Shown: positions 50,399 to 61,737 of the stretch, piece by piece
Layout of the letters: the number at the start of each line of letters is the position of its first letter
Numbering within the stretch: the first letter of the stretch is position 1
Virus record (IMG/VR): IMGVR_UViG_3300036853_000446
Span: 62,001 to 126,000 of that record
Strand: one strand, 5' to 3'
Length of the DNA: 64,000 nt
Notes under the pieces: model-generated
The model's input: only the letters and a program-made list of their open reading frames with translations
Database searches by the model: none
What the model was told of the DNA's origin: nothing
Made by a program: the position numbers and the translations under genes

Positions 50399-51103
50399 TT
50401 AGGCGCAACAACGCTTGATGAGGGCGCCCAAACGTTGGTCGCCCCAAACACTCCACAGCTCGTTCGGGTCCTTCGTATTGTGGCCCGAAGGCATGGGAAC
50501 CCGAGGGAACCTGACGATCTTGATCTTGAATTGGTCGCTCAATTCGCGCGCGATATCGTGAGCAACTTTATAGCCTGTCGTATCCATGTCATAAGCAACG
50601 AAGATGGTTCGTGCGACCCTGCGTAGGACTCGCCGCAGCTGGCTTGATACACCGGCGTGAAGCGTCGAGATGACATTCGGCACGTGACGTTGAATCGGGC
50701 ACAAATCGAAAACGCCCTCGACGAGCCAAACCTCTTCGGTCTCCCAAACGCTCGCCATGGCTTGGGCCAAGCCAAAGAATGCGGGCTCTTCTTTCGACTC
50801 GAAATAGTCGAGGTACCCTTTGATCTTCGGCTCGCGATCCCTAAACTGGAGCCCCAACACGACGCCGAGCGTGCTCGTCAGGGGGAAAACCAAGGGATCT
50901 TTGAACTGCTTTCTGTGGGCCGACCACCACGTGACAAATCGAGGATCACAACCAAGCCCCGTCGGAAGGCGGGCCCCCGGCAGGATCCCTATGTCGAAGG
51001 CGTCGATTTGTTCGTCGCTCACCCCGCGGCGCCAGAGCGCTTCTCGACTCTCGGCGACCATTTGCGCGTGCGCCGTCCCGACCATTTCCGTCATCCAGCT
51101 CAC
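50399..51103 (-). CDS. dnaG: DnaG-type primase catalytic core (TOPRIM), no zinc-binding domain (234 aa)
   Basis: FFGL, VWLVEGVFDL, AYDMDTTG. Confidence 0.75.
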   Translation of the reverse strand: MSWMTEMVGTAHAQMVAESREALWRRGVSDEQIDAFDIGILPGARLPTGLGCDPRFVTWWSAHRKQFKDPLVFPLTSTLGVVLGLQFRDREPKIKGYLDYFESKEEPAFFGLAQAMASVWETEEVWLVEGVFDLCPIQRHVPNVISTLHAGVSSQLRRVLRRVARTIFVAYDMDTTGYKVAHDIARELSDQFKIKIVRFPRVPMPSGHNTKDPNELWSVWGDQRLGALIKRCCA

Positions 51104-51711
51104 GAAGCGCCTCGGATCAGGAAGACCGCCTGATCGACTCGAGTCATCAGGACACCGACCGAGTCGTCGATGCGCGTATAGAATCCCAAGACGGACGGAG
51201 ACGCCGCCAGCAACGCATCGCCCTTGGCCAAATCAGCCACCAGGATTTGCTGGTCGCCCTTAGAGATGTACCCCTGGAGGCCCATCAGGCGATCCGCTTC
51301 CTCGCGCGTCATTGCGCTGACCTCTTCGACCAAACCATAGGGCACCACGATGCTGCGAGGCGGGAGCTGCATTCTGGCCGACGCCTCAGACAGCGAGTTA
51401 CACCGGTTCTGCCAACCATTCGTCCGGGACATCTCCCAGAGGGCATCGAAGAACTTCGGAAGGAGCGCGCCTTCATTTTCTGTCGAGCACTCGAAGAACC
51501 CGCAGCGCGCGACGCCTCGCTCGCGAGACACCCGAGTGGGCACGAGCCGACCCCGGGCATCCGTCGCGGCCAAAGGCTCAAAGCCCGCGTCGATGGGTCG
51601 CTCCGTAAACGCGGGAACGGCGAACCCTACTTTCAACGTTTCGTCGCTACGCCGCCGGTGACGCTCCGTAACCAATAGGCACTCGAGCGCGGTCTTCTTC
51701 GGGAAGGGCAT
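51100..51711 (-). CDS. Hypothetical protein (203 aa)
   Basis: Coupled to the primase gene by a 4-nt overlap. Confidence 0.6.
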   Translation of the reverse strand: MPFPKKTALECLLVTERHRRRSDETLKVGFAVPAFTERPIDAGFEPLAATDARGRLVPTRVSRERGVARCGFFECSTENEGALLPKFFDALWEMSRTNGWQNRCNSLSEASARMQLPPRSIVVPYGLVEEVSAMTREEADRLMGLQGYISKGDQQILVADLAKGDALLAASPSVLGFYTRIDDSVGVLMTRVDQAVFLIRGAS

Positions 51712-52258
51712 CTAGGGGTGGTAAGTACACCACCGCGTCTGGAGTATTTTCAGGCGAGGCCGGCGAGAGGAATCGAACAATCCTCCGCCACAGGCGTTCG
51801 AACACCGAGATCCCCTCGACCACCTCCAACCGGCCGCCCCTGACCCACAGCAGAATATGAGCTGCGGGCAAATGTGCCTCGATCCACCTCGGATCGCCCA
51901 AGTTCGCAACGAACTCCGCGTAAACGTCCGCCCTCGTCTGCTTGTACGTGAAATAGGGGCAACGTTGAGCGTCGAGCGGCTCCTCGCAGACGTTCCCGTT
52001 CCAAGTCTCCGGGTCTTCCGAGCCCAACATGCACAGGCCAATGGTTTGCGCCACGGGCAGCGCCACATCATCCTCGACCCCCACCGAGATCCGGTTGTAA
52101 GAGTCGTTCGGTTCTCCGTAGATGGTGCGCCGGTGATCCAGCGGGTGTCGACGATTGTGTATGCACAGGTGCGGCAGTATCTCCCGCGTCAGCCGCTTCC
52201 GCAGTTCGGCAACCACGATGGCGCGCAGTCGATCCTCGATTTCCGCGTCCGACCTCAC
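51647..52258 (-). CDS. Hypothetical protein with conserved-looking Cys residues (203 aa)
   Basis: 4-nt overlap with the upstream gene; C.HN, LC, VC, RCPYF. Confidence 0.6.
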   Translation of the reverse strand: MRSDAEIEDRLRAIVVAELRKRLTREILPHLCIHNRRHPLDHRRTIYGEPNDSYNRISVGVEDDVALPVAQTIGLCMLGSEDPETWNGNVCEEPLDAQRCPYFTYKQTRADVYAEFVANLGDPRWIEAHLPAAHILLWVRGGRLEVVEGISVFERLWRRIVRFLSPASPENTPDAVVYLPPLDALPEEDRARVPIGYGASPAA

Positions 52259-52956
52259 GGTCTCACCTTGCTCTTACGGTCGGCCGCGACCTGTTTGACG
52301 CGCAGCGCGCGCTGACCGCCGACGGCCTCTTCGTGACTCTCGTAGGCAAGGTCGGAATGGTCGCAGTACGCGGACTTATGGGTGATCAACAAGAAATGAA
52401 GATTCATACTTTGGGCCAATGCCTTGAGGAACTTCCCGGTCGGCGCGATGTACTCGTCCGAGACCGCCAACAGCGTCTCGTCCAGGACGAGGAAAGGGAG
52501 GCGCTCGAGCTTCAACAGAGTCAAAACACGAAGGAGCAGCGCGATGACACTCGACGCGCCCCCGCCGAAGCTCTCGAGCGGTCGACCCCGAACCGCCAGG
52601 GGGTCATCCGTGCCCCCCTGCCGCAGCTGAAACTCGATCGCGACCTTGTTGTATTTCGTCTCGATGTCCGACTCGAAATGCAAATCCTGGTCGAAGAATA
52701 TGGTTTGCAGTCCGTCCGTCACGATCGACTCCAGCGTTCTGACCTGCTTGACCACCAGCTGATCCATCAGGGCTCTAAAGAGTTCCTCGACTTTGAGTAG
52801 TTTCTCGACATCGCTCGTCAGCTTCTCGATCTCCGACGCCTTTTGCGTCCTATCCGCCAGCAGATGGTCTCGAAGAACCTCCACCTTCGCGGTTCGACGG
52901 CACAGCACGGCGAGCCGATCTATTGCTTCGACGGGACGTACCGCATTGCTCGACAT
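52255..52956 (-). CDS. sbcC: SbcC/Rad50 ATPase, C-terminal half (233 aa)
   Basis: Short coiled coil, signature-like SFGGG, Walker B FLVLDE, H-loop LLITH; no Walker A. Confidence 0.8.
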   Translation of the reverse strand: MSSNAVRPVEAIDRLAVLCRRTAKVEVLRDHLLADRTQKASEIEKLTSDVEKLLKVEELFRALMDQLVVKQVRTLESIVTDGLQTIFFDQDLHFESDIETKYNKVAIEFQLRQGGTDDPLAVRGRPLESFGGGASSVIALLLRVLTLLKLERLPFLVLDETLLAVSDEYIAPTGKFLKALAQSMNLHFLLITHKSAYCDHSDLAYESHEEAVGGQRALRVKQVAADRKSKVRP

Positions 52957-54179
52957 GCGTAGCCCTTTTGATCGACCGCGGGTTTCTCTACGTATTTCCC
53001 GCTCTCGTCGATGAAATAGTCCTCAATCACGCGAAACAAATGCTGCTTCGACTTTTTGACCTGAGCGATGCCCAGCATGACGTCGCGAGGATGCTTCGTC
53101 GCCTCGACGAGCTGGATCATCCAGTCGAGGTTGATGTGGAATTGGACGTCCTCCGTCTTGCTGAGGCTCCCAGAGCCCCAACAGCCCGGTTCACCCTCGA
53201 CGAGCGGCGTGACCGCCAACGGCAAAGACTCAATCTCGCCCCCCAAGGTGTTGCTCGCGACGACCGTCAGCAGGCACGTCGTGTGGTCGTAACGAACGAA
53301 CGCCTTGTTTTTATCCGCAGGCAAGGTGCTGCGAACGTATTTGAGTTCCTTCTCGAGGCTCGCCCGGCCGATCCTAAAGATATGATTGTCGAGCGCGAGA
53401 CCGTAATATCCGTATTTACTTCCGGCGTAGTCTTGGTTCGACCAACCGAGCACCTGCTCGGTCGAATTCATGAAATACGTCGAATTCTCGCTATTGTAGA
53501 CGTCGATGGTACCCGGCGATTTAGACAAGAACGACAGCAGCAGCGGGATCCGCGTACCGTAAACGAAGAGCGGCTTTCCCTCCAGCTCGGGACTGTAGAA
53601 ATAGCTCGTTCGACTCGTCGAGTGCCCCAGCATGTATCCGTTCCCATCGGCCTCGTCCGCGCCGAATAGCTGAACGTTGAGAAACTCTGGCTTCGCTAGC
53701 GCATCCTTCGGTTCCGCCAAGTAGGGTCGCGTCATGTTCAGAGCTTCCTTCAAGAGGACGCTGGGGAACGTGGCGACTTTCTTGGCGTTGCTGAAATCTG
53801 CGTCGAGCGCCTTGAGCGCCTTCGCGGTGAACGTGATGATCTTGTGAACACCCCCCTTGGCGCCGCCGGTGTCTCGTCGACACCAAACGACGTCAGCGCC
53901 GCCCTCCTCTCCGGACTCGAATTCGACCCATCCCTCGACGTAGCGCAGGTCCCCTTGTGGTCCCGTCGGAAAGACGAAGGCCCCTTCGCCCTCGACGTCA
54001 AACACGGGAATTGGCACGCGAAAGCGCTGGTGGCCGTCTTCGGAATACAGGTAGCAATGCTCGCCGCGCACGACGCAGAGATAGCCCGAGCTGCCTCGTG
54101 CATCGATGGAGGTCGGCGTGATCGACGAAACCAGGGCCAGCGCCGTGGTCCAGTCCTGTGTCAAAACTTTAAACTTCAT
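52920..54179 (-). CDS. dnaN: DNA polymerase III beta sliding clamp-like protein (419 aa)
   Basis: MKFKV....W..AL..V N-terminus, three-domain length, FHINLDWM near the clamp F-N motif; context with dnaX. Confidence 0.65.
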   Translation of the reverse strand: MKFKVLTQDWTTALALVSSITPTSIDARGSSGYLCVVRGEHCYLYSEDGHQRFRVPIPVFDVEGEGAFVFPTGPQGDLRYVEGWVEFESGEEGGADVVWCRRDTGGAKGGVHKIITFTAKALKALDADFSNAKKVATFPSVLLKEALNMTRPYLAEPKDALAKPEFLNVQLFGADEADGNGYMLGHSTSRTSYFYSPELEGKPLFVYGTRIPLLLSFLSKSPGTIDVYNSENSTYFMNSTEQVLGWSNQDYAGSKYGYYGLALDNHIFRIGRASLEKELKYVRSTLPADKNKAFVRYDHTTCLLTVVASNTLGGEIESLPLAVTPLVEGEPGCWGSGSLSKTEDVQFHINLDWMIQLVEATKHPRDVMLGIAQVKKSKQHLFRVIEDYFIDESGKYVEKPAVDQKGYACRAMRYVPSKQ

Positions 54180-54188
54180 GACAGTGCC

Positions 54189-54461
54189 TCACTTTTCGTA
54201 TTCGTCTTGGGCCCGCTCGACCACGGCCAACTCGGTGTCGAATTTCGTGATGAGTTCTTCCAACTCTTTCTCCAGACGAGCGCGCTCCTCGCGGAGAGTT
54301 TTCGGATCGAACCCCGCGGCTTCGATCTCTTGTTTCAACCGCAGCAGTTCCTGCTTTTTCTCCTCCATGACCCCTTGGAGCTTGGACTGCTTGGTCGAGG
54401 CTGCGGTGTGGCGACGAGTGAGGTCCTCCACGCGCGCTTGGATCTGTTCTAAGGTTGCCAT
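54189..54461 (-). CDS. Small coiled-coil protein (90 aa)
   Basis: Two long heptad helices separated by AGFDP. Confidence 0.7.
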   Translation of the reverse strand: MATLEQIQARVEDLTRRHTAASTKQSKLQGVMEEKKQELLRLKQEIEAAGFDPKTLREERARLEKELEELITKFDTELAVVERAQDEYEK

Positions 54462-55364
54462 CTATTTTTTGGTCCTTTGACTCTCTTTGAGGACAACGGC
54501 GAGGCCCTCGGGGCAAGCCTCTTGCGTCGCATACGGGCAAAACCGGCAGTTCGCGATCCGAGCCGAAGGTTCAAACACGGATTTGATGAGCGGGAGATGC
54601 TTTTGCTCCCCCACCCTTTTCGAATCCGCCTCGAGTTCATGCATGAATTGGACAACGTTGGTCTTCAGCTCGTCGATGTCGGTCTGGTTGCACGTACACC
54701 AGTCGATGTTGGACGGCGGATCGAAATGCCAATAAACGAAGGCCGTCCGATCCGGCAGGCGGCCTTGCTTCTCGCGATACAGCATCGAGTACCACTGCAG
54801 CTGAAGCTCGTCGGTGTAGCGGTCACGCTTTCGGGAGCCCTTTCCGTCGATGATGACGAGGTCACGGTCCGGCGGGATGCGAAGCATGACGAAATCAGCG
54901 CGTCCCCCAACGCGATGACCCGAGATGTCGGAGTCGAGCTTCAGCTCGGCCTGGACGTTCCTTCCGATGAGCCGATGGGTCTTGATCGTCGCGAGGCCGC
55001 GAGGCACTGCGGCGTGAACGTCCGAGACGAGTTCGTCTCGCGAAGCGTACAGGTTTTCCCGCCAGACGATGGTTCCTGCAGCGCGGAGCCTTCCCGGCTT
55101 CTGCTCCTCGTCGAGGACGGTGTCGACCATGGTCTCGACCATCGCCGTCATGATGGCGCTCGCGCCGGGATGCCTCCAGAGTCGATCCCGGTAGAACGCC
55201 TCGAATAGACGGCCGACGACCGTACCGTAGACCGAGCCCAAGCGGTCTTCCGGCTTTTCGGGCGGCGTCCTGTTGATGTACGAGTTCCAATATTTGTAGC
55301 GGCAGCCTTTGGCGCACTGATAGCCCGAGTATGAAAGGTACACGCGAGCACATACACCTCTCAA
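54462..55364 (-). CDS. PD-(D/E)XK nuclease, Cas4/AddB-like (300 aa)
   Basis: LSYS...C..KY, GRADF, IIDGKG, QL.WY, C-terminal CRFCPY...C Fe-S pattern. Confidence 0.85.
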   Translation of the reverse strand: MRGVCARVYLSYSGYQCAKGCRYKYWNSYINRTPPEKPEDRLGSVYGTVVGRLFEAFYRDRLWRHPGASAIMTAMVETMVDTVLDEEQKPGRLRAAGTIVWRENLYASRDELVSDVHAAVPRGLATIKTHRLIGRNVQAELKLDSDISGHRVGGRADFVMLRIPPDRDLVIIDGKGSRKRDRYTDELQLQWYSMLYREKQGRLPDRTAFVYWHFDPPSNIDWCTCNQTDIDELKTNVVQFMHELEADSKRVGEQKHLPLIKSVFEPSARIANCRFCPYATQEACPEGLAVVLKESQRTKK

Positions 55365-56338
55365 ACCTTCCGCAGACGCGCTTGCTGCAAATAGAAGAGC
55401 GCCAGATCGTGAATCTCTCGCGCGAAGTCCAGGCTGCCGATCGTCTCTTCGATGGACACGCCTTGCTTCGCCATGAGATCCGCCTGGATCCGCGCGACAT
55501 ACTGCTCGATGTTCGCGCTTTCCCGGTCCTGGCGAGTCTTGCGTTCGATGTCGAAAACCTCAGCGGGAGGCGCCACTTTCAAAAGGTGCGGCGTGATCGT
55601 AATGCCTTCGCTCGTCACTTCGATGAGGGCGACCTTCGGTGTCCTCGTCAGGTTCTCCTTTGAGAGTGCGCCGCGGGAGACCGCGCCCTGGTTCACGAAC
55701 CAGCGGTCGCGAATCTTGACGATGCCCTGATCCTGATGCCAATGCCCCCAACAGAAGATGTCCGGACCTCCGTCGACGATCAGCTGCTCGTACCGAAAGA
55801 CGGGCTCGCCATAAAACTCCTCGACGCTGCTCGGCGGGTTTTCGCCGGCAAGGGCGTGCACGATGGCGATGAGGACCTCTTTACCTCGCTTCCGAATGCC
55901 CTGCAGATCCTCGACCGTTCGGAACGGGCTGTAAGGCATTCCCACGACGCGAACCTCGAGATCGCCGTCTTTGAAGGTCTGATCCCGCAAATGTTCGAAG
56001 ACCCGGGCGTTGTACAGAACGCCCAACGGTTGATCCGACAACGTCTCGAGGTTGTTGTGTTTTATGTCGTGATTGCCTTCGACGCAGAAGACCTTGCAAG
56101 GGTACGCCTGATGCAGGGCCGCCACCTTGGCTACGAGACGATGCGAGTTTTGCGTCGGGGCTTTGATATGAAAGAAATCTCCCCCATCGAGAACGGCACA
56201 AGCCGAATGCGCGCGCGCCAACTCCCCGATCTGCTCGAGATTCGACCATATCTCCGCCGGGTAGTCCCCCTTCCACGACTCGGGAGAGTGCTCTGACACA
56301 TGCACGTCCGTCCGGAAGACGAAGGCTAATCTGGACAT
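55361..56338 (-). CDS. sbcD: SbcD/Mre11 metallophosphoesterase nuclease (about 325 aa)
   Basis: TDVH, GGDFFH, GNHD, GHWH, NQG. Confidence 0.9.
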   Translation of the reverse strand: MSRLAFVFRTDVHVSEHSPESWKGDYPAEIWSNLEQIGELARAHSACAVLDGGDFFHIKAPTQNSHRLVAKVAALHQAYPCKVFCVEGNHDIKHNNLETLSDQPLGVLYNARVFEHLRDQTFKDGDLEVRVVGMPYSPFRTVEDLQGIRKRGKEVLIAIVHALAGENPPSSVEEFYGEPVFRYEQLIVDGGPDIFCWGHWHQDQGIVKIRDRWFVNQGAVSRGALSKENLTRTPKVALIEVTSEGITITPHLLKVAPPAEVFDIERKTRQDRESANIEQYVARIQADLMAKQGVSIEETIGSLDFAREIHDLALFYLQQARLRKV

Positions 56339-57699
56339 GCCGCCGCGTGCTCGGGACTGATGTCTTGATGGCACGTCGGGCAAATCCCAAGGGCCGCAAA
56401 CTCAGCCAAGACAGCCCGCCCCTCCTCGACGCTCTCCGCGAGAAGCCGCTCGGCGCGTTCGAGTTCGTGCTCCAATCGGTCCTGGTGCGCGAACAGTCGA
56501 TCCGCCTTGCCGACTTTCTTGGCGAGGCTCGTCAAAGCCGCAGTGTCCGGCACCGTGAGCTTCTGGAGACGGCCCGCTCTCTCGAATACGACCTTGAGCT
56601 TTGCAAAGGCGCTCGACCAAGCCGCCAATCTCTTCAGATCATCGAACGGCTTTCGAAGACGGGCCGCAGACGGCGGAGTGACCTGGTCGACCTTCCCCAA
56701 ACGCTCGACCCAGCGCTCGCGGTCGACCACCGCCGCCTGCCATGAGCCGACCTTCCGCCACCGCTCCGCGGTCGTGGTGAGTCGACGGGAGTCAGGCAGC
56801 TCGGGCCGCAAGACGCGCTCGAGCGCCGTCACGACCCCCACGCGGGCCTGCCAATCCTCCTCCAGCCCGCACACCTGGTTGAGCCTTTCCGAGGTGGCCC
56901 GGAGAGGCTTTGCGCCGGGTATCGCGGGGGCGAGCGCGGTCCTCAGTCGGATCGCCGCCTTGGTGCCTTCCGCGGCCTCCGAAAGGAGACGGTCGGCAAG
57001 GCTGAGCCGTGCCGAAACCTCCCGTACTTTGGCGCCCTGATCCTGGAGCGCCCGCACTTTAACGAGGTGACCGTCTAGGGTGGCGTACGTCTCGAGTTGG
57101 CGTCCCAGGGTCACGACGTCAGACTCCCGCACCTTTCTCGTCGCGATGGCGGATCGACGGTCCTTCGAAACGGCCGTCATGGCCTGGTTGATGTCGTCGA
57201 GTTGACCGATGTCGCTCAGGATATCCGCGACGACGCTCCCCGAAAGATCGAGCAGGAACGGGGTCTCGAATTGACTCGAAACCTGAAGAAGCGATTGGGT
57301 CGGCCCGAGCTTGACCGGCGAGAATTGGGCACCGAGAAACTCCGGCAGTTCCATGCTCTGGCCGACCCGGTCGTAAACGGACTCGACTCCGTCCTTCCAG
57401 ACCGTGTACCGGTTGACGCCCTTGCTTCCCTTCTCCCAAAGGAACCCTTGGCCTTCGGCGAACATGAGCTTGACCGACGAGAAGCACTTGCAACTCTTGG
57501 TTCCGTTGAGGATTCTAGCGCACGAGCGCGCGTCGTGCCGTACGAAATCGGAGCCCGAACCGCCAGACAAGGCGCTCTTGAGTGCCCGCACGATCGACGA
57601 CTTACCGATGTTGGTTCTGCCAACCAACGCCGTGAAGCCCTCGATGTTGAGCTTCAAGTGGTCAATGGCCTGGAAGTTCTTGATCTCTACATCGATCAC
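56326..57699 (-). CDS. sbcC: SbcC/Rad50 ATPase, N-terminal half with coiled coil and zinc hook (457 aa)
   Basis: IKNFQ, Walker A GRTNIGKS, Q-loop region SSQF, long coiled coil ending in CPTCHQ; no Walker B. Confidence 0.85.
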   Translation of the reverse strand: MIDVEIKNFQAIDHLKLNIEGFTALVGRTNIGKSSIVRALKSALSGGSGSDFVRHDARSCARILNGTKSCKCFSSVKLMFAEGQGFLWEKGSKGVNRYTVWKDGVESVYDRVGQSMELPEFLGAQFSPVKLGPTQSLLQVSSQFETPFLLDLSGSVVADILSDIGQLDDINQAMTAVSKDRRSAIATRKVRESDVVTLGRQLETYATLDGHLVKVRALQDQGAKVREVSARLSLADRLLSEAAEGTKAAIRLRTALAPAIPGAKPLRATSERLNQVCGLEEDWQARVGVVTALERVLRPELPDSRRLTTTAERWRKVGSWQAAVVDRERWVERLGKVDQVTPPSAARLRKPFDDLKRLAAWSSAFAKLKVVFERAGRLQKLTVPDTAALTSLAKKVGKADRLFAHQDRLEHELERAERLLAESVEEGRAVLAEFAALGICPTCHQDISPEHAAACPD

Positions 57700-59126
57700 T
57701 CCCCTGCCTCGGAATCTGCCTCGGAATCTGCCTCGGAATCTGCCTCGGAATCTGCTTCAGAGTCAGTGTCAGTGTCGGACTCGATGTCGACTTCCTCGGG
57801 CATGTCTACGGTGAAATCATCGTCATCAGTTCCCATCGAACTCGAGATGAGGGCATCAACCTCGTCATCCTCGCTGACGGCCATCTCGGCCTGCGTCTCG
57901 GGGTCCACCTCTGCTTGCAGCCGAATAGACTTGAGCACGGTGACCTGCAGGGTGTCCAAGGCCGCCTTGTCACCCATCAGGAAGGCCCGGAGCTTCTCTC
58001 GACCTTGAAACTTCTGACCGGCAACCTCGAAAAAAGCCCCGGTCTTCTTGATGAGCTTGTGAGCCACGCCCGATTCGATGACCGTATAGAGATCGTCAAT
58101 CCCTTGTCCGAAACGGATGAAGATGTCCGCGGTCTGGCCCTGCTTGGCGTCGACCTTGGATTTGACCACCTTGACCTGGGTGTGGCTTCCGAAAGGAGCC
58201 TTCTTCTCCTTCCGCGTGACCGGGTCCTTGAAAACGATCCGCTCTGTCCGGATGCAGGTCGTCTGGAGCCGCAGGTACGCGAAAAACTTGAGCGCCTTGC
58301 CGCCCGCCGTCGAGTCGCCGCTCCCGCCGCCACCGTAACCCGACGTGCTGATCTGCGCCCGCGTCTGATTGATGAAGATCACGGCCGTCCCGAGCGGGTT
58401 CTTCTCGTTTGGCTTCAGCAGCCGAACGAGCTTCGGCAGCGATTGGGCGAGCTTGAGGGCGAGAACGCCGATCTTGATCGGGTCCTCGAAGCTCTTTTCC
58501 ATCTCGGCTTTTGGGACCATTGCCGCGACCGAGTCGACGACGATGAGATCAACTCCCGTCAGGAGCCCCACCCGCAACATCTCGAGCCCCTGCTCCATGT
58601 TGTCGGGCTGGTAGAGCATGAGACGTCGATGGTCGAAATTGACGCCGAGGTCTTTCGCGTACTTGTGGCTCAGGGCATGCTCGAAATCGAGGAACATGGC
58701 ACTGCCGCCCCGGCGCTGGACCTCGACGATGGCCTCGAGAGACAAAGTGGTCTTACCACTCGCCTCCGGACCATATATCTCAGTGATTCGCCCGCGCGGA
58801 TAGCCGGGACACAGAGGTCCAGACTTGTCCGGCGCAAGCACGCCGCCGATCACATGATCGATATTCATCGAGCCTGACGAGACGCAGGGCAACGGGTGTT
58901 GGTTGAGTCCGATAGGCTTCTGCCCCGTCAATTTCTCGATGGCCTTGATCGCGAGTTCGGCGTTCTTGATCGACTTCGTCGCGTCAGCCTCGCCGCCCCC
59001 GCCTCTCAACTTGGCAACCTTCTTCAGACCGGGCTTCGTCGGCTTCGCTACGGGGCCCGTACGAGATTTCCCTTTCGGAAGGGACACGGGCTCGGCCACT
59101 ACGGCATTATCGGCGCTTTCAGACAT
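57696..59126 (-). CDS. recA: RecA recombinase (476 aa)
   Basis: GRITEIYGPEASGKTT, FLDFEHA, IVVDSVAA, IFINQ.R, GGKALKF; basic N-terminal and acidic C-terminal tails. Confidence 0.95.
   Translation of the reverse strand: MSESADNAVVAEPVSLPKGKSRTGPVAKPTKPGLKKVAKLRGGGGEADATKSIKNAELAIKAIEKLTGQKPIGLNQHPLPCVSSGSMNIDHVIGGVLAPDKSGPLCPGYPRGRITEIYGPEASGKTTLSLEAIVEVQRRGGSAMFLDFEHALSHKYAKDLGVNFDHRRLMLYQPDNMEQGLEMLRVGLLTGVDLIVVDSVAAMVPKAEMEKSFEDPIKIGVLALKLAQSLPKLVRLLKPNEKNPLGTAVIFINQTRAQISTSGYGGGGSGDSTAGGKALKFFAYLRLQTTCIRTERIVFKDPVTRKEKKAPFGSHTQVKVVKSKVDAKQGQTADIFIRFGQGIDDLYTVIESGVAHKLIKKTGAFFEVAGQKFQGREKLRAFLMGDKAALDTLQVTVLKSIRLQAEVDPETQAEMAVSEDDEVDALISSSMGTDDDDFTVDMPEEVDIESDTDTDSEADSEADSEADSEADSEAGE
57704..57763 (+). 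repeat. 12-bp tandem repeat encoding the RecA acidic tail
   Basis: ctgcctcggaat x4 plus one imperfect copy; encodes (DSEA)n. Confidence 0.9.
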
Positions 59127-60807: not shown

Positions 60808-61737
60808 TCACAGGTTGGCTATCAGAGATTCGATGTCGTCGTCGGGCTCCTCCAAGAATCGGATGATCGCCTCGTCCTCCGTTTCATCCGTTGCATCCAC
60901 TTTATCGACCGTCTCCGCCTTGTCGGCTTTGATCGCCGTGGGCTTCTCGGCTTTGATCGTCTCCGCCTTTTCGGCTTTGATCGCCGTGGGCTTCTCGGCT
61001 TTGATCGCCGTGGGCTTCTCGACGTCGACAATGCCCCTGATGAGCGCCTCGAGCGTCGTCGCATCCAAACCATCGGCGGGGTCCATGACAACCGAGGGCC
61101 GTGGCGGCTGTGGCGCTCTCTTGCTTGCCGCGCGTAAGGTTGCCCTGTCGGCTCGCTCACTTTCTATCTCCTCTTCCGACGAGGTGATCAGCGCCTCGAG
61201 GTCGAAGGCGCCAATCTCGTCCGCCGGGTCCATAGAGCGTCCCCTCGAGTGCTCGGACTCGTCGCCATAGAAGGAGCCCGTTTTCAGCTGGTCCCGAAGA
61301 AGCGAACGCTGGAGCCGAATGGCGCTCATCGTATTGTCGAGTTCGCCCTTCCGATAGCGAATGACGGCCTTGACGTGGGAGAGGCTCCGGATCTGACTTT
61401 CGAGACGTATGATCCGTTGCTTCTCGTCCTTGAGGATCACGTCGATCATCGCCTGTCTGTCCGTGATGTTCGGACGCGCGGCGACACTCGGGTCGGTCGC
61501 CAACAGTTCACTCGAGCGGATCCCGTAGACGGCCTCCACGGCATCGAGATCCGTTGCCAGCCGTGCCTCTTGCACGAGGACGTCCTGAAAATAGTGAGAG
61601 ACCTCGTTGAGGTAGTTACGGCACAGCGAGATTTGCTCCCGCAGAAACTCGGGACCCAGGCTCGAAGGGTCCGTGGGCATGTTGAGAACGAGCGCGTTCA
61701 TGCGCTCATAGATCTTGTCGCTCTGCTCGGGTGTCAC
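60808..61737 (-). CDS. Coiled-coil protein, possibly UvsY-like recombination mediator (309 aa)
   Basis: Helical hairpin N-terminal 150 aa, low-complexity tail; context only. Confidence 0.4.
   Translation of the reverse strand: MTPEQSDKIYERMNALVLNMPTDPSSLGPEFLREQISLCRNYLNEVSHYFQDVLVQEARLATDLDAVEAVYGIRSSELLATDPSVAARPNITDRQAMIDVILKDEKQRIIRLESQIRSLSHVKAVIRYRKGELDNTMSAIRLQRSLLRDQLKTGSFYGDESEHSRGRSMDPADEIGAFDLEALITSSEEEIESERADRATLRAASKRAPQPPRPSVVMDPADGLDATTLEALIRGIVDVEKPTAIKAEKPTAIKAEKAETIKAEKPTAIKADKAETVDKVDATDETEDEAIIRFLEEPDDDIESLIANL
60910..61022 (-). repeat. 24-bp tandem repeat encoding (EKPTAIKA)n
   Basis: EKPTAIKA x3 interleaved with EKAETIKA / DKAETV variants. Confidence 0.85.

What the first reader, a model, noticed from the sequence alone, without database searches (positions are those of the whole stretch)
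52255..57699. Rad50/SbcC naturally split at the zinc hook, halves 3.4 kb apart
Seen: 56326..57699 has Walker A, a long coiled coil and ends just after CPTC; 52255..52956 has only ~70 aa of coil, then signature, Walker B and H-loop. Between them lie sbcD, a Cas4-like nuclease, a 90-aa pure coiled-coil gene and the beta clamp. Both halves have clean starts and stops, so this is not a frameshift. Known: Rad50/SbcC is normally one chain folding back as an antiparallel coil with the CxxC hook at the apex. Inference: a heteromeric Rad50 whose descending arm is much shorter than the ascending arm; the 90-aa protein (54189..54461) may supply part of it.
Basis: partly seen in the sequence, partly recalled or inferred. 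Interest (0 to 1): 0.6.

Follow-up and report, generated by a model that had tools for sequence, protein, structure and literature searches.

The report
Naturally split phage Rad50/SbcC ATPase
A 408-kb phage and more than a hundred relatives encode the DNA-end-processing ATPase Rad50/SbcC as two separate proteins cut just after its zinc hook, always with a conserved 90-residue helical protein, giving a natural test of why this family normally needs one folded-back chain.

Summary
ORF 56326-57699 (457 aa) carries Walker A, a Q-loop and a long helical arm, and ends 14 residues after CPTC. ORF 52255-52956 (233 aa) is one 79-residue helix followed by ABC lobe II: an FGGG signature, Walker B, D-loop and H-loop. 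SbcD, a PD-(D/E)XK nuclease, a 90-aa helical protein (p90) and a divergent beta clamp lie between them.

The order RecA, N-half, SbcD, nuclease, p90, clamp, C-half recurs in almost every one of 80 IMG/VR loci with enough flank. No fused SbcC was found, and the 408-kb record holds no other SMC-type ATPase.

N-half, p90-like protein and C-half also occur together in cultured Bacillus phages (0305phi8-36, phBC6A51, vB_BboS-125). They are annotated there but never interpreted as a split.

New here: the arm is five tandem 41-residue repeats, and the copy number varies between relatives while the C-half and p90 keep their lengths. The arm's partner must therefore come in trans. A fold of N-half, C-half and p90 gave only weak support for p90 binding.

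I found no paper describing this. Verdict: a new variant of a known kind, interest about 0.6.

The parts
56326..57699 (-). N-half of split Rad50/SbcC (457 aa): ABC lobe I, helical arm, terminal zinc hook
   Evidence: AAA_23 7.6e-7, AAA_15 1.4e-7, phrog_16465 2.6e-14. AF2 head matches Rad50/SMC N-segments at Z 9-11. 58 homologues of 262-528 aa, nearly all 400-494 aa; none approaches a fused length.
57598..57621 (-). Walker A, GRTNIGKS (aa 27-34)
   Evidence: G27, N30-S34 invariant in alignment A1. Coordinates.
57271..57285 (-). Q-loop region, QVSSQ (aa 139-143)
   Evidence: Q143 invariant, Q139 at least 90% conserved in A1.
57082..57240 (-). Conserved base of the arm (aa 154-206), the expected partner of the C-half helix
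   Evidence: Helices 154-185 and 192-206 in AF2. Well conserved, mean distance 0.54 against 0.82 for the repeats. The pairing itself is inferred.
56428..57042 (-). Five tandem 41-residue helical repeats (aa 220-424), with Pro breaks at aa 261, 302, 343 and 384
   Evidence: Exact 41-aa Pro spacing. Profile-profile matches in register, probability 73-97%, E 3e-5 to 6.5e-10. Autocorrelation peak at shift 41. Unit consensus.
56329..56427 (-). Hook segment (aa 425-457), with CPTC at 56371-56382 and a short His/Cys tail
   Evidence: C440 and C443 invariant. aa 389-452 match phrog_77 SbcC at 1.1e-7. aa 353-452 align to positions 352-450 of 878 of Rad50 NF003034. PF04423 is hit in 3 of 29 members.
55361..56383 (-). 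SbcD/Mre11-type nuclease (340 aa from TTG; probably 325 aa from the ATG at 56338)
   Evidence: Metallophos 1.2e-9, phrog_100, TIGR00619 4.8e-7, Mre11 models. Homologues are 320-328 aa. Start options.
54462..55364 (-). PD-(D/E)XK (Cas4/RecB-like) nuclease, 300 aa
   Evidence: PDDEXK_1 2.2e-19, phrog_69 6.6e-13, weak cas4. Conserved in synteny.
54189..54461 (-). p90: conserved 90-aa helical protein with a central AGFDPKTL break; candidate third subunit
   Evidence: All close homologues are 90 aa, 76% mean identity. Broad family has L39 and P53 invariant. 664 clusters, nearly all 83-101 aa. Homologues lie between the halves in Bacillus phages. Fold test ipSAE 0.32 against controls 0.00, rated weak.
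52920..54179 (-). Divergent sliding-clamp-like protein, 419 aa
   Evidence: phrog_947 1.2e-3. Atlas features 0.95 to phage DNA pol III beta clusters. No Pfam or PDB sequence hit.
52255..52956 (-). C-half of split Rad50/SbcC (233 aa): short descending helix plus ABC lobe II
   Evidence: phrog_15167 7.8e-19. Profile hits SMC head C-terminal parts at 7e-6. AF2 model matches the C-segments 5h66_B, 3qkr_B, 1ii8_B and 1f2u_B.
52699..52935 (-). Single long helix of the C-half (aa 8-86)
   Evidence: DSSP of the AF2 model, pLDDT 83-95. aa 55-88 are highly conserved.
52549..52569 (-). Signature-motif position, FGGGASS (aa 130-136); the canonical Ser is Gly
   Evidence: F130 and G131-G133 invariant. Aligned to LSGGE of SMC1A.
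52471..52494 (-). Walker B and D-loop, FLVLDETL (aa 155-162)
   Evidence: L156, L158, D159, E160 and L162 invariant.
52375..52386 (-). H-loop, ITHK (aa 191-194)
   Evidence: T192 and K194 at least 90% conserved; His in most members.
57696..59126 (-). RecA/UvsX-type recombinase; its stop overlaps the N-half start (GTGA)
   Evidence: RecA 1.8e-56. Always directly upstream of the N-half in relatives.

Best explanation
This is a functional Rad50/SbcC made from separate polypeptides. It is a fixed trait of a large clade of mostly huge phages and is also present in some smaller cultured phages.

Shown:
- The N-half supplies ABC lobe I (Walker A, Q-loop), a conserved base helix, five 41-residue helical repeats and a terminal CxxC hook.
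- The C-half supplies a single 79-residue helix and lobe II (signature position, Walker B, D-loop, H-loop).
- Neither half can bind and hydrolyse ATP alone.

Inferred:
- The halves join non-covalently into one head. The C-half helix pairs antiparallel with the base of the N-half arm (about aa 154-206).
- Two such heads plus an SbcD dimer form an ATP-driven DNA-end nuclease.
- That nuclease feeds the neighbouring PD-(D/E)XK nuclease and RecA for recombination-dependent replication.
- Beyond the base the arm has no covalently linked return strand. The repeat number changes between relatives while the C-half and p90 keep their lengths, so the arm's partner must come in trans and be indifferent to arm length.
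- The likeliest partners are the conserved 90-aa protein, the arm of the second N-half running in parallel, or both. The CxxC pair would close the tip through a shared zinc.
For: - Complementary motifs with invariant catalytic residues.
- AF2 models match the N- and C-segments of solved Rad50/SMC heads: Z 9-11, and Foldseek 2e-7 to 1e-4.
- The hook region aligns to the middle of SbcC/Rad50 models.
- The operon order is identical in L003, L005 and L006, in LR745208, and in almost every one of the 80 IMG/VR loci with enough flank. No fused gene was found, and no N-half homologue exceeds 528 aa.
- The 408-kb record has no other SMC/Rad50-type ATPase.
- Starts and stops overlap along the operon.
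- The arm is built of 41-residue repeats whose copy number varies.
- N-half, p90 and C-half also occur together in 0305phi8-36, phBC6A51 and vB_BboS-125.
- Fold of N-half + C-half + p90: ipSAE 0.32 (runs 0.18, 0.32, 0.32) against a best control of 0.00, including 0.00 when the N-half was replaced. That mark was reached by 58 of 80 solved complexes and 2 of 110 mismatched pairs. At 0.60 or under it was reached by only 7 of those 80 and by both passing mismatches. The runs agree in at least 89% of contacts and the partner pLDDT is at least 68. The tool rates this weak.
- Experimental precedent: Rad50 heads are solved as two chains (1f2u A/B and others). Human Rad50 expressed as separate N- and C-halves forms a working complex (PMC3642328).
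Against: - No interface between N-half and C-half was folded or measured here.
- The signature Ser is Gly in the whole family (FGGG; RGGG in the Bacillus and Microbacterium phages), so ATP-driven head engagement may differ.
- Support for p90 is weak, and no contacts were reported.
- Distance-matrix correlation of p90 with parts of the halves showed no preferred partner.
- p90-like domains also occur, with extensions, in two loci that lack the halves.
- Microbacterium phage Magritte has a hookless N-half about 39 kb from its C-half and no clear p90.
- The record is only about 86% complete.
Confidence: 0.8

Rival explanations
1. The halves form a Rad50, but p90 is not part of it. The single-helix arms of two N-halves pair with each other as a parallel two-stranded coiled coil clasped by the zinc hook. 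p90 serves another role in the operon, for example as an adaptor to DNA, the clamp or the nuclease.
For: - A parallel homodimer tolerates any repeat number, which fits arms that differ by whole units while other parts stay fixed.
- Support for p90 in the fold is only weak.
- p90 length does not track the repeat period: 41, 44 and 47 aa against 90, 94 and 77-92 aa.
- One p90-like protein carries what looks to me, by eye, like a winged-helix C-terminal extension, and sits away from any SbcC half.
- Magritte appears to lack p90.
Against: - p90 lies between the N-half and C-half in every lineage, whatever other genes are present.
- The fold score fell to 0.00 when the N-half was replaced.
- The Atlas model of p90 alone has pTM 0.34 at pLDDT 0.77. 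The helices are confident but the fold is not settled alone.
Confidence: 0.3
2. The 41-residue units fold back on one another within a single N-half as a compact helical zigzag. No trans partner is then needed, and the CxxC is a cap rather than a distal hook.
For: Pro-bounded helices of 33-50 residues could pack as hairpins. Aromatic core positions (W/F/L at unit position 19) are typical of bundles.
Against: - Close relatives differ by single units: lengths cluster near 367, 405-414, 445-455 and 487-491 aa. This would flip the CxxC end from one side of the bundle to the other.
- The AF2 monomer has pTM 0.33 and shows aa 188-260 as one straight helix.
- No bundle-type structural match to the arm appeared in the top 50.
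Confidence: 0.1
3. The two ORFs are remnants or independent proteins that do not assemble, for example a decayed SbcC or an OLD/RecN-like protein plus an unrelated fragment.
For: The top curated hits of both halves are far below family cut-offs: RecN 27 bits against a cut-off of 408, and SMC_N 19-20 bits against 40. The signature Ser is missing.
Against: - More than 100 unique intact copies of each half, with invariant catalytic residues and conserved lengths.
- Strict co-occurrence with SbcD.
- Neither half has a complete nucleotide-binding domain.
- No TOPRIM or other effector domain is present.
Confidence: 0.03

Closest known systems
Canonical Rad50/SbcC with Mre11/SbcD (E. coli SbcCD, T4 gp46/gp47, P. 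furiosus Rad50)
   Same: ABC head with Walker A and Q-loop at one end and signature, Walker B, D-loop and H-loop at the other. CxxC hook at the far end of a helical arm. Partnered with a calcineurin-like nuclease. The head folds match.
   Different: Two genes instead of one, and the chain stops 5-28 residues after CxxC. There is no covalent return strand. The arm is a 41-residue tandem repeat. The signature Ser is replaced by Gly. A conserved 90-aa protein accompanies the halves.
Engineered two-chain Rad50: the P. furiosus Rad50 catalytic domain crystallised as N and C chains (1F2U, 1II8, 3QKR), and human Rad50 split into halves with FKBP in place of the hook (Lee et al. 2013, PMC3642328)
   Same: N- and C-terminal parts made as separate polypeptides assemble into a working head.
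   Different: Those are laboratory constructs. In the human construct both halves keep full-length coils that pair. Here the split is natural, asymmetric (about 280 against about 50 free helical residues) and conserved.
Mre11-Rad50 fusion protein gp8 of Bacillus phage 0305phi8-36 (Yoshida, Claverie and Ogata 2011, PMC3175470)
   Same: The gp8 Rad50 part is a homologue of the N-half (6e-27) and ends with CPTC. gp7 is a p90 homologue and gp5 is a C-half homologue.
   Different: In 0305phi8-36 SbcD is fused in front of the N-half, and the arm period is 47. The paper noted only that one P-loop NTPase segment 'was not observed'. It did not link gp5.
phBC6A51 BC1852/BC1854/BC1855 and vB_BboS-125 gp32/gp34/gp35
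   Same: The same three-gene set, N-half, small p90-like protein and C-half, with SbcD annotated nearby in phBC6A51. Annotated as 'Exonuclease SbcC', hypothetical, and 'Chromosome segregation ATPases'.
   Different: Temperate or small siphophages of about 60 kb. The three genes are nearly adjacent. p90 is 77-78 aa and the repeat period is 47. There is no clamp or PD-(D/E)XK gene between the halves.
Exonuclease VII, XseA with many copies of the small helical XseB (PMC10835039; an analogy only, partly from my own knowledge)
   Same: A nuclease complex in which a small helical subunit is present in many copies per large subunit (XseA4.XseB24, abstract listed). This is a possible model for p90 coating a repeated arm.
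   Different: No sequence relation: p90 gave no Exonuc_VII_S hit. The binding mode of p90 is unknown.

Membership tests
Rad50/SbcC (SMC-like ABC ATPase of the Mre11/SbcD complex) | N-terminal Walker A and Q-loop in an ABC lobe I fold | tested here: met
   GRTNIGKS and Q143 invariant. The head matches 1f2u_A, 3qf7_A, 6s6v_C and others at Z 7.5-11.
Rad50/SbcC (SMC-like ABC ATPase of the Mre11/SbcD complex) | C-terminal Walker B, D-loop and H-loop in an ABC lobe II fold | tested here: met
   LDE and THK conserved. Foldseek hits to 5h66_B, 3qkr_B, 1ii8_B and 1f2u_B at 2e-7 to 8e-4.
Rad50/SbcC (SMC-like ABC ATPase of the Mre11/SbcD complex) | Signature motif with Ser (LSGG) | tested here: not met
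   The aligned position reads FGGG, and this is invariant across the family. Ser is replaced by Gly. The functional consequence is unknown.
Rad50/SbcC (SMC-like ABC ATPase of the Mre11/SbcD complex) | CxxC zinc hook at the far end of the coiled coil | tested here: met
   112 of 112 N-halves have CxxC near the end, 80 of them CPTC. phrog_77 1.1e-7, NF003034 positions 352-450 of 878, PF04423 in 3 of 29 members. Zinc binding itself cannot be tested here.
Rad50/SbcC (SMC-like ABC ATPase of the Mre11/SbcD complex) | One polypeptide that folds back as an intramolecular antiparallel coiled coil | tested here: not met
   Two ORFs 3.4 kb apart. The N-half stops 14 aa after CPTC, and the C-half has only one 79-residue helix. 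No fused relative was found.
Rad50/SbcC (SMC-like ABC ATPase of the Mre11/SbcD complex) | Associated Mre11/SbcD nuclease | tested here: met
   An SbcD gene overlaps the N-half stop and is conserved in relatives.
Rad50/SbcC (SMC-like ABC ATPase of the Mre11/SbcD complex) | ATP-dependent DNA-end binding and nuclease activation | not testable with these tools
   Needs biochemistry.
RecN | Single chain with both head halves, a short coil, no hook and no SbcD partner; passes TIGR00634 | tested here: not met
   TIGR00634 scores 27 and 22 bits against a cut-off of 408. A hook and SbcD are present.
OLD/AAA_15-type ABC ATPases (OLD, GajA, PtuA) | Complete ABC domain in one chain, usually with a TOPRIM or other nuclease domain or partner, and no zinc hook | tested here: not met
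   AAA_15 matches only aa 3-45. There is no TOPRIM in either half. OLD, GajA and PtuA are lower structural matches than SMC/Rad50.
Mre11-Rad50 fusion proteins (Yoshida et al. 2011) | Mre11/SbcD domain fused N-terminally to the Rad50 part | tested here: not met
   SbcD is a separate ORF in the window. The fused form is seen only in 0305phi8-36 gp8.

The most novel reading that the evidence does not exclude
This would be a tripartite Rad50 with an arm architecture not known in any SMC-family protein. The arm would be a single-chain rod of 41-residue repeats ending in the zinc hook. Its partner strand would be supplied in trans by a dedicated 90-residue subunit (one or several copies), by the sister arm in parallel, or by both. 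Arm length could then change by simple repeat gain or loss.
Probability: 0.4. Interest if true: 0.8.

Novelty: new variant of a known kind. Interest (0 to 1): 0.6.

Why it matters
The intramolecular antiparallel coiled coil, with a hinge or hook at its apex, is treated as the common ground plan of SMC, Rad50, RecN and MukB proteins. How signals travel along it between hook and head is an open question.

This family has dispensed with the covalent return strand. It varies arm length in 41-residue steps and adds a small conserved subunit. That makes it a natural experiment on what the return strand is for.

The family is also tractable. The same three-gene set exists in cultured Bacillus phages, and the proteins are small.

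On the practical side, annotation pipelines currently name the pieces 'exonuclease', 'chromosome segregation ATPase' and 'hypothetical'. Surveys may therefore record SbcC as absent or truncated in these phages.

Tried and rejected
- **p90 as a copy of the arm repeat.** hhalign of the p90 alignment against the stacked units gave probability 0.8%. Rejected.
- **Mirror-tree test.** I correlated p90 distances with N-head, N-base, N-arm, N-distal, C-coil and C-head over 57 loci, controlling for RecA, SbcD and the nuclease. Partial r was 0.17-0.32 for all regions, so no partner was singled out.
- **Natural fusions of p90 to either half.** None appeared among the best 150 of 664 clusters. The two longer proteins, P0316 and P0309, lie in loci without the halves.
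- **A second SMC/Rad50 ATPase in the 408-kb record.** None found. The AAA_23 side hit is a ClpX-like protein, and the other hit has no family.
- **Relatives of the C-half in 185,579 species genomes.** None found by the pattern-limited scan.
- **Reading the arm geometry from the AF2 monomer.** Structure searches were dominated by the head and showed only that aa 188-260 is a straight helix. The tools give no coordinates or PAE.
- **Literature.** Four searches found no description of a natural split.
- Not used. Only genetic code 11 was used.
- **The single complex job.** It went to p90, so N-half with C-half alone, and an N-half homodimer, were not folded.


Full report
**Setting.** The window is bases 62001-126000 of a 407,634-bp IMG/VR virus record, about 60% G+C and about 86% complete by CheckV. 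The finding lies in a minus-strand operon of replication and recombination genes. In order these are:
- RecA (57696-59126)
- N-half (56326-57699)
- SbcD (55361-56383)
- a PD-(D/E)XK nuclease (54462-55364)
- a 90-aa protein, here called p90 (54189-54461)
- a clamp-like protein (52920-54179)
- C-half (52255-52956)
- two unknown genes, a Toprim primase-like gene and a DnaX-like clamp loader

Neighbouring genes overlap or abut. RecA/N-half, SbcD/nuclease and C-half/next gene each overlap by 4 nt. The clamp and C-half overlap by 37 nt.

- *N-half (457 aa).* It has Walker A GRTNIGKS (aa 27-34) and a Q-loop (Q143). Helices run from aa 154 to 436, and CPTC sits at aa 440-443, 14 residues before the stop. 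Pfam sees AAA_23 and AAA_15 at the N-terminus. PHROGs places it in phrog_16465, and its aa 389-452 match the middle of phrog_77 (SbcC-like). NCBIfam aligns aa 353-452 to positions 352-450 of the 878-position Rad50 model.
- *C-half (233 aa).* It belongs to phrog_15167. AF2 (pLDDT 77) predicts one helix, aa 8-86, followed by a beta-rich lobe. That lobe carries FGGGASS (aa 130-136), FLVLDETL (aa 155-162) and ITHK (aa 191-194).
- *Fold matches.* The N-half model matches the N-terminal chains of solved Rad50/SMC/RecF heads at Z 9-11. The C-half model matches the C-terminal chains 5h66_B, 3qkr_B, 1ii8_B and 1f2u_B.
- *A difference from the canon.* The Ser of LSGG is Gly throughout the family.

**The split is a conserved trait, not an accident of this genome.**
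- Word-based searches found 58 N-half relatives (nearly all 400-494 aa, the longest 528 aa) and more than 137 C-half relatives of 178-243 aa, on contigs up to 549 kb.
- Three contigs read through the look-up of encoding contigs, with the N-half at 37-44% identity, show the identical gene order, including a 90-aa gene.
- A scan of IMG/VR with the C-half profile gave 96 relatives. Of the 80 loci kept, almost every one with enough flank has RecA, N-half, SbcD, nuclease, p90, clamp and C-half in that order, and none has a fused gene. p90 fell below threshold in a few divergent loci, and one locus showed no N-half.
- All 112 unique N-halves end 5-28 residues after CxxC. 76 of them have His or Cys eight residues after the second Cys.
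- LR745208, a 485-kb uncultured phage, has the halves about 6.3 kb apart with three extra genes between them.
- The window's own record has no other SMC/Rad50-type ATPase.
- No relative was found in 185,579 species genomes by the pattern-limited scan.

**The same set of genes exists in cultured phages.**
- *Bacillus phage 0305phi8-36.* gp8 (769 aa) is SbcD fused to an N-half and ends with CPTC. gp7 (92 aa) is a p90 homologue with the break MGYDPKDL. gp5 (236 aa) is a C-half.
- *phBC6A51 and vB_BboS-125.* phBC6A51 has BC1852 ('Exonuclease SbcC', 518 aa), BC1854 (77 aa, p90-like) and BC1855 ('Chromosome segregation ATPases', 211 aa). vB_BboS-125 has gp32, gp34 and gp35 in the same roles.
- *Microbacterium phage Magritte.* It has a C-half (gp2) and a hookless 350-aa N-half (gp155, annotated hypothetical) about 39 kb away across the genome ends. 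It has no clear p90.
- *Earlier literature.* Yoshida et al. [quoted passage not shown] Four full-text searches found no description of a naturally split Rad50/SbcC.

**New anatomy: the arm is a tandem repeat.**
- Pro breaks fall at aa 261, 302, 343 and 384, exactly 41 residues apart.
- Profile-profile comparison of the alignment blocks 220-260, 261-301, 302-342, 343-383 and 384-424 matches them in register, with probability 73-97% and E from 3e-5 to 6.5e-10.
- The unit consensus is P-[DE]-x3-L-x5-R-L-x2-[LVA]-x2-[LWF]-x3-L-x2-L-x3-V-x2-L. It has heptad-like spacing and an aromatic core position.
- A 41-residue self-similarity peak is found in 30 of the 38 IMG/VR N-halves with a clear signal. 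LR745208 shows a period of 44 and the three Bacillus phages a period of 47.
- N-half lengths cluster near 367, 401-415, 445-455 and 487-491 aa, about one unit apart. C-halves stay at 210-243 aa and p90 at 87-97 aa.

**What this implies.** In an ordinary folded-back coil, a duplication in one strand needs a matching one in the other. Here only about 50 residues of the C-half helix are free to pair with the arm base (aa 154-206, well conserved). The roughly 230 residues beyond have no covalent partner, and their number changes freely. The partner must therefore be indifferent to arm length. Three options remain:
- The sister arm in parallel.
- One or more copies of a small subunit.
- Folding back within one chain. 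This fits poorly, because changes of a single unit between close relatives would move the hook from one end of the bundle to the other. In addition, AF2 gives pTM 0.33 with a straight helix at aa 188-260.

**p90.**
- It is 90 aa in all close relatives, with 76% mean identity. By comparison, the arm repeats average 82% pairwise distance.
- The broad family keeps L39 and P53 invariant, with G30 and E45 nearly so, around a central [GN]-x-[DNT]-P break.
- A whole-library profile search found 664 clusters, 242 of them at E 1e-10 or better. Nearly all are stand-alone proteins of 83-101 aa.
- p90 always lies between the N-half and the C-half. That matches the order head-N, arm, hook, return strand, head-C of an ancestral gene, and so fits an origin from the return strand. 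I could not show such homology, and p90 is not related to the arm units.
- The Atlas model of p90 alone has confident helices but pTM 0.34.
- *The one complex job* (N-half + C-half + p90, with p90 scored) returned 'weak support'.
  - The score was ipSAE 0.32 (runs 0.18, 0.32, 0.32). The best of three controls was 0.00, including 0.00 with the N-half replaced.
  - That mark was reached by 58 of 80 solved complexes and 2 of 110 mismatched pairs. At 0.60 or under it was reached by only 7 of those 80 and by both passing mismatches.
  - The runs agree in at least 89% of contacts, and the partner pLDDT is at least 68.
  - No contacts were given. The job used my own alignments and three chains, unlike the calibration.
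- A mirror-tree test singled out no partner region.
- Two p90-like proteins with C-terminal extensions sit in loci without the halves.

**Mechanism.** I judge it 0.8 likely that the halves assemble into one ABC head and act with SbcD as an MR-type nuclease in recombination-dependent replication. Experimental precedent makes the assembly step credible. Rad50 heads have been crystallised from separate N and C chains. Human Rad50 made as two halves is active once the tips are dimerised (PMC3642328). I put about 0.5 on p90 being a subunit, and I cannot say where it sits.

**Verdict.** The finding is not unique to this genome, and its parts are already annotated in cultured phages. As far as the held literature shows, the split has not been described. 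It comes with a repeat-built arm and a dedicated small protein that depart from the SMC ground plan. I rate it a new variant of a known kind.

Noticed in passing
window 57484-57537 (N-half aa 55-72): The ATPase head carries a His/Cys cluster, H55-x4-C60-x9-C70-x-C72. It is invariant or nearly so in the huge-phage clade. It is absent from P0057 and from the 0305phi8-36, phBC6A51 and vB_BboS-125 homologues. It looks like an inserted zinc site.
   Followed up: partly
window 57704-57755: A perfect 12-nt tandem repeat, 4.3 copies. It encodes the (DSEA)n acidic tail of RecA and lies directly against the N-half start codon.
   Followed up: no
window 60910-61021: A 24/48-nt tandem repeat inside ORF 60808-61737, encoding repeated KAEKPTAI-like units.
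   Followed up: no
L048:5446-7539, L054:5102-7486 (also L021, L046, L049): In some relatives the SbcD ORF is 688-795 aa and contains a LAGLIDADG_3 domain. This is probably an intein or homing-endonuclease insertion in SbcD.
   Followed up: partly
L106:2339-3391 and L008:284-934 (Microbacterium phage Magritte gp155 and gp2): gp155 is a hookless 350-aa N-half annotated 'hypothetical protein'. It lies about 39 kb from the C-half, which is annotated 'exonuclease', across the ends of the linear record. No clear p90 was found.
   Followed up: partly
L094:3969-4541 (vB_BboS-125 gp33): An AP2-domain gene sits between the N-half and the p90-like gene. It is probably a mobile endonuclease inserted into the split operon.
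   Followed up: no
L095:3389-4165 (P0316) and L097:8001-8516 (P0309): These are p90-like domains with C-terminal extensions. One extension looks like a winged helix by eye. Both sit in loci without SbcC halves, and L095 lies next to Mrr_cat and DUF3800 genes.
   Followed up: partly
L061 ~14493 (621 aa) and L062 ~13904 (380 aa): Two relatives have a second, weaker hit to the N-half profile a few kb downstream of the C-half. This may be another ABC-type ATPase.
   Followed up: no
window 51100-52258: Two conserved 203-aa ORFs directly downstream of the C-half have no Pfam or PHROG match. Genes of similar size (180-207 aa) sit in the same positions in the related contigs.
   Followed up: no
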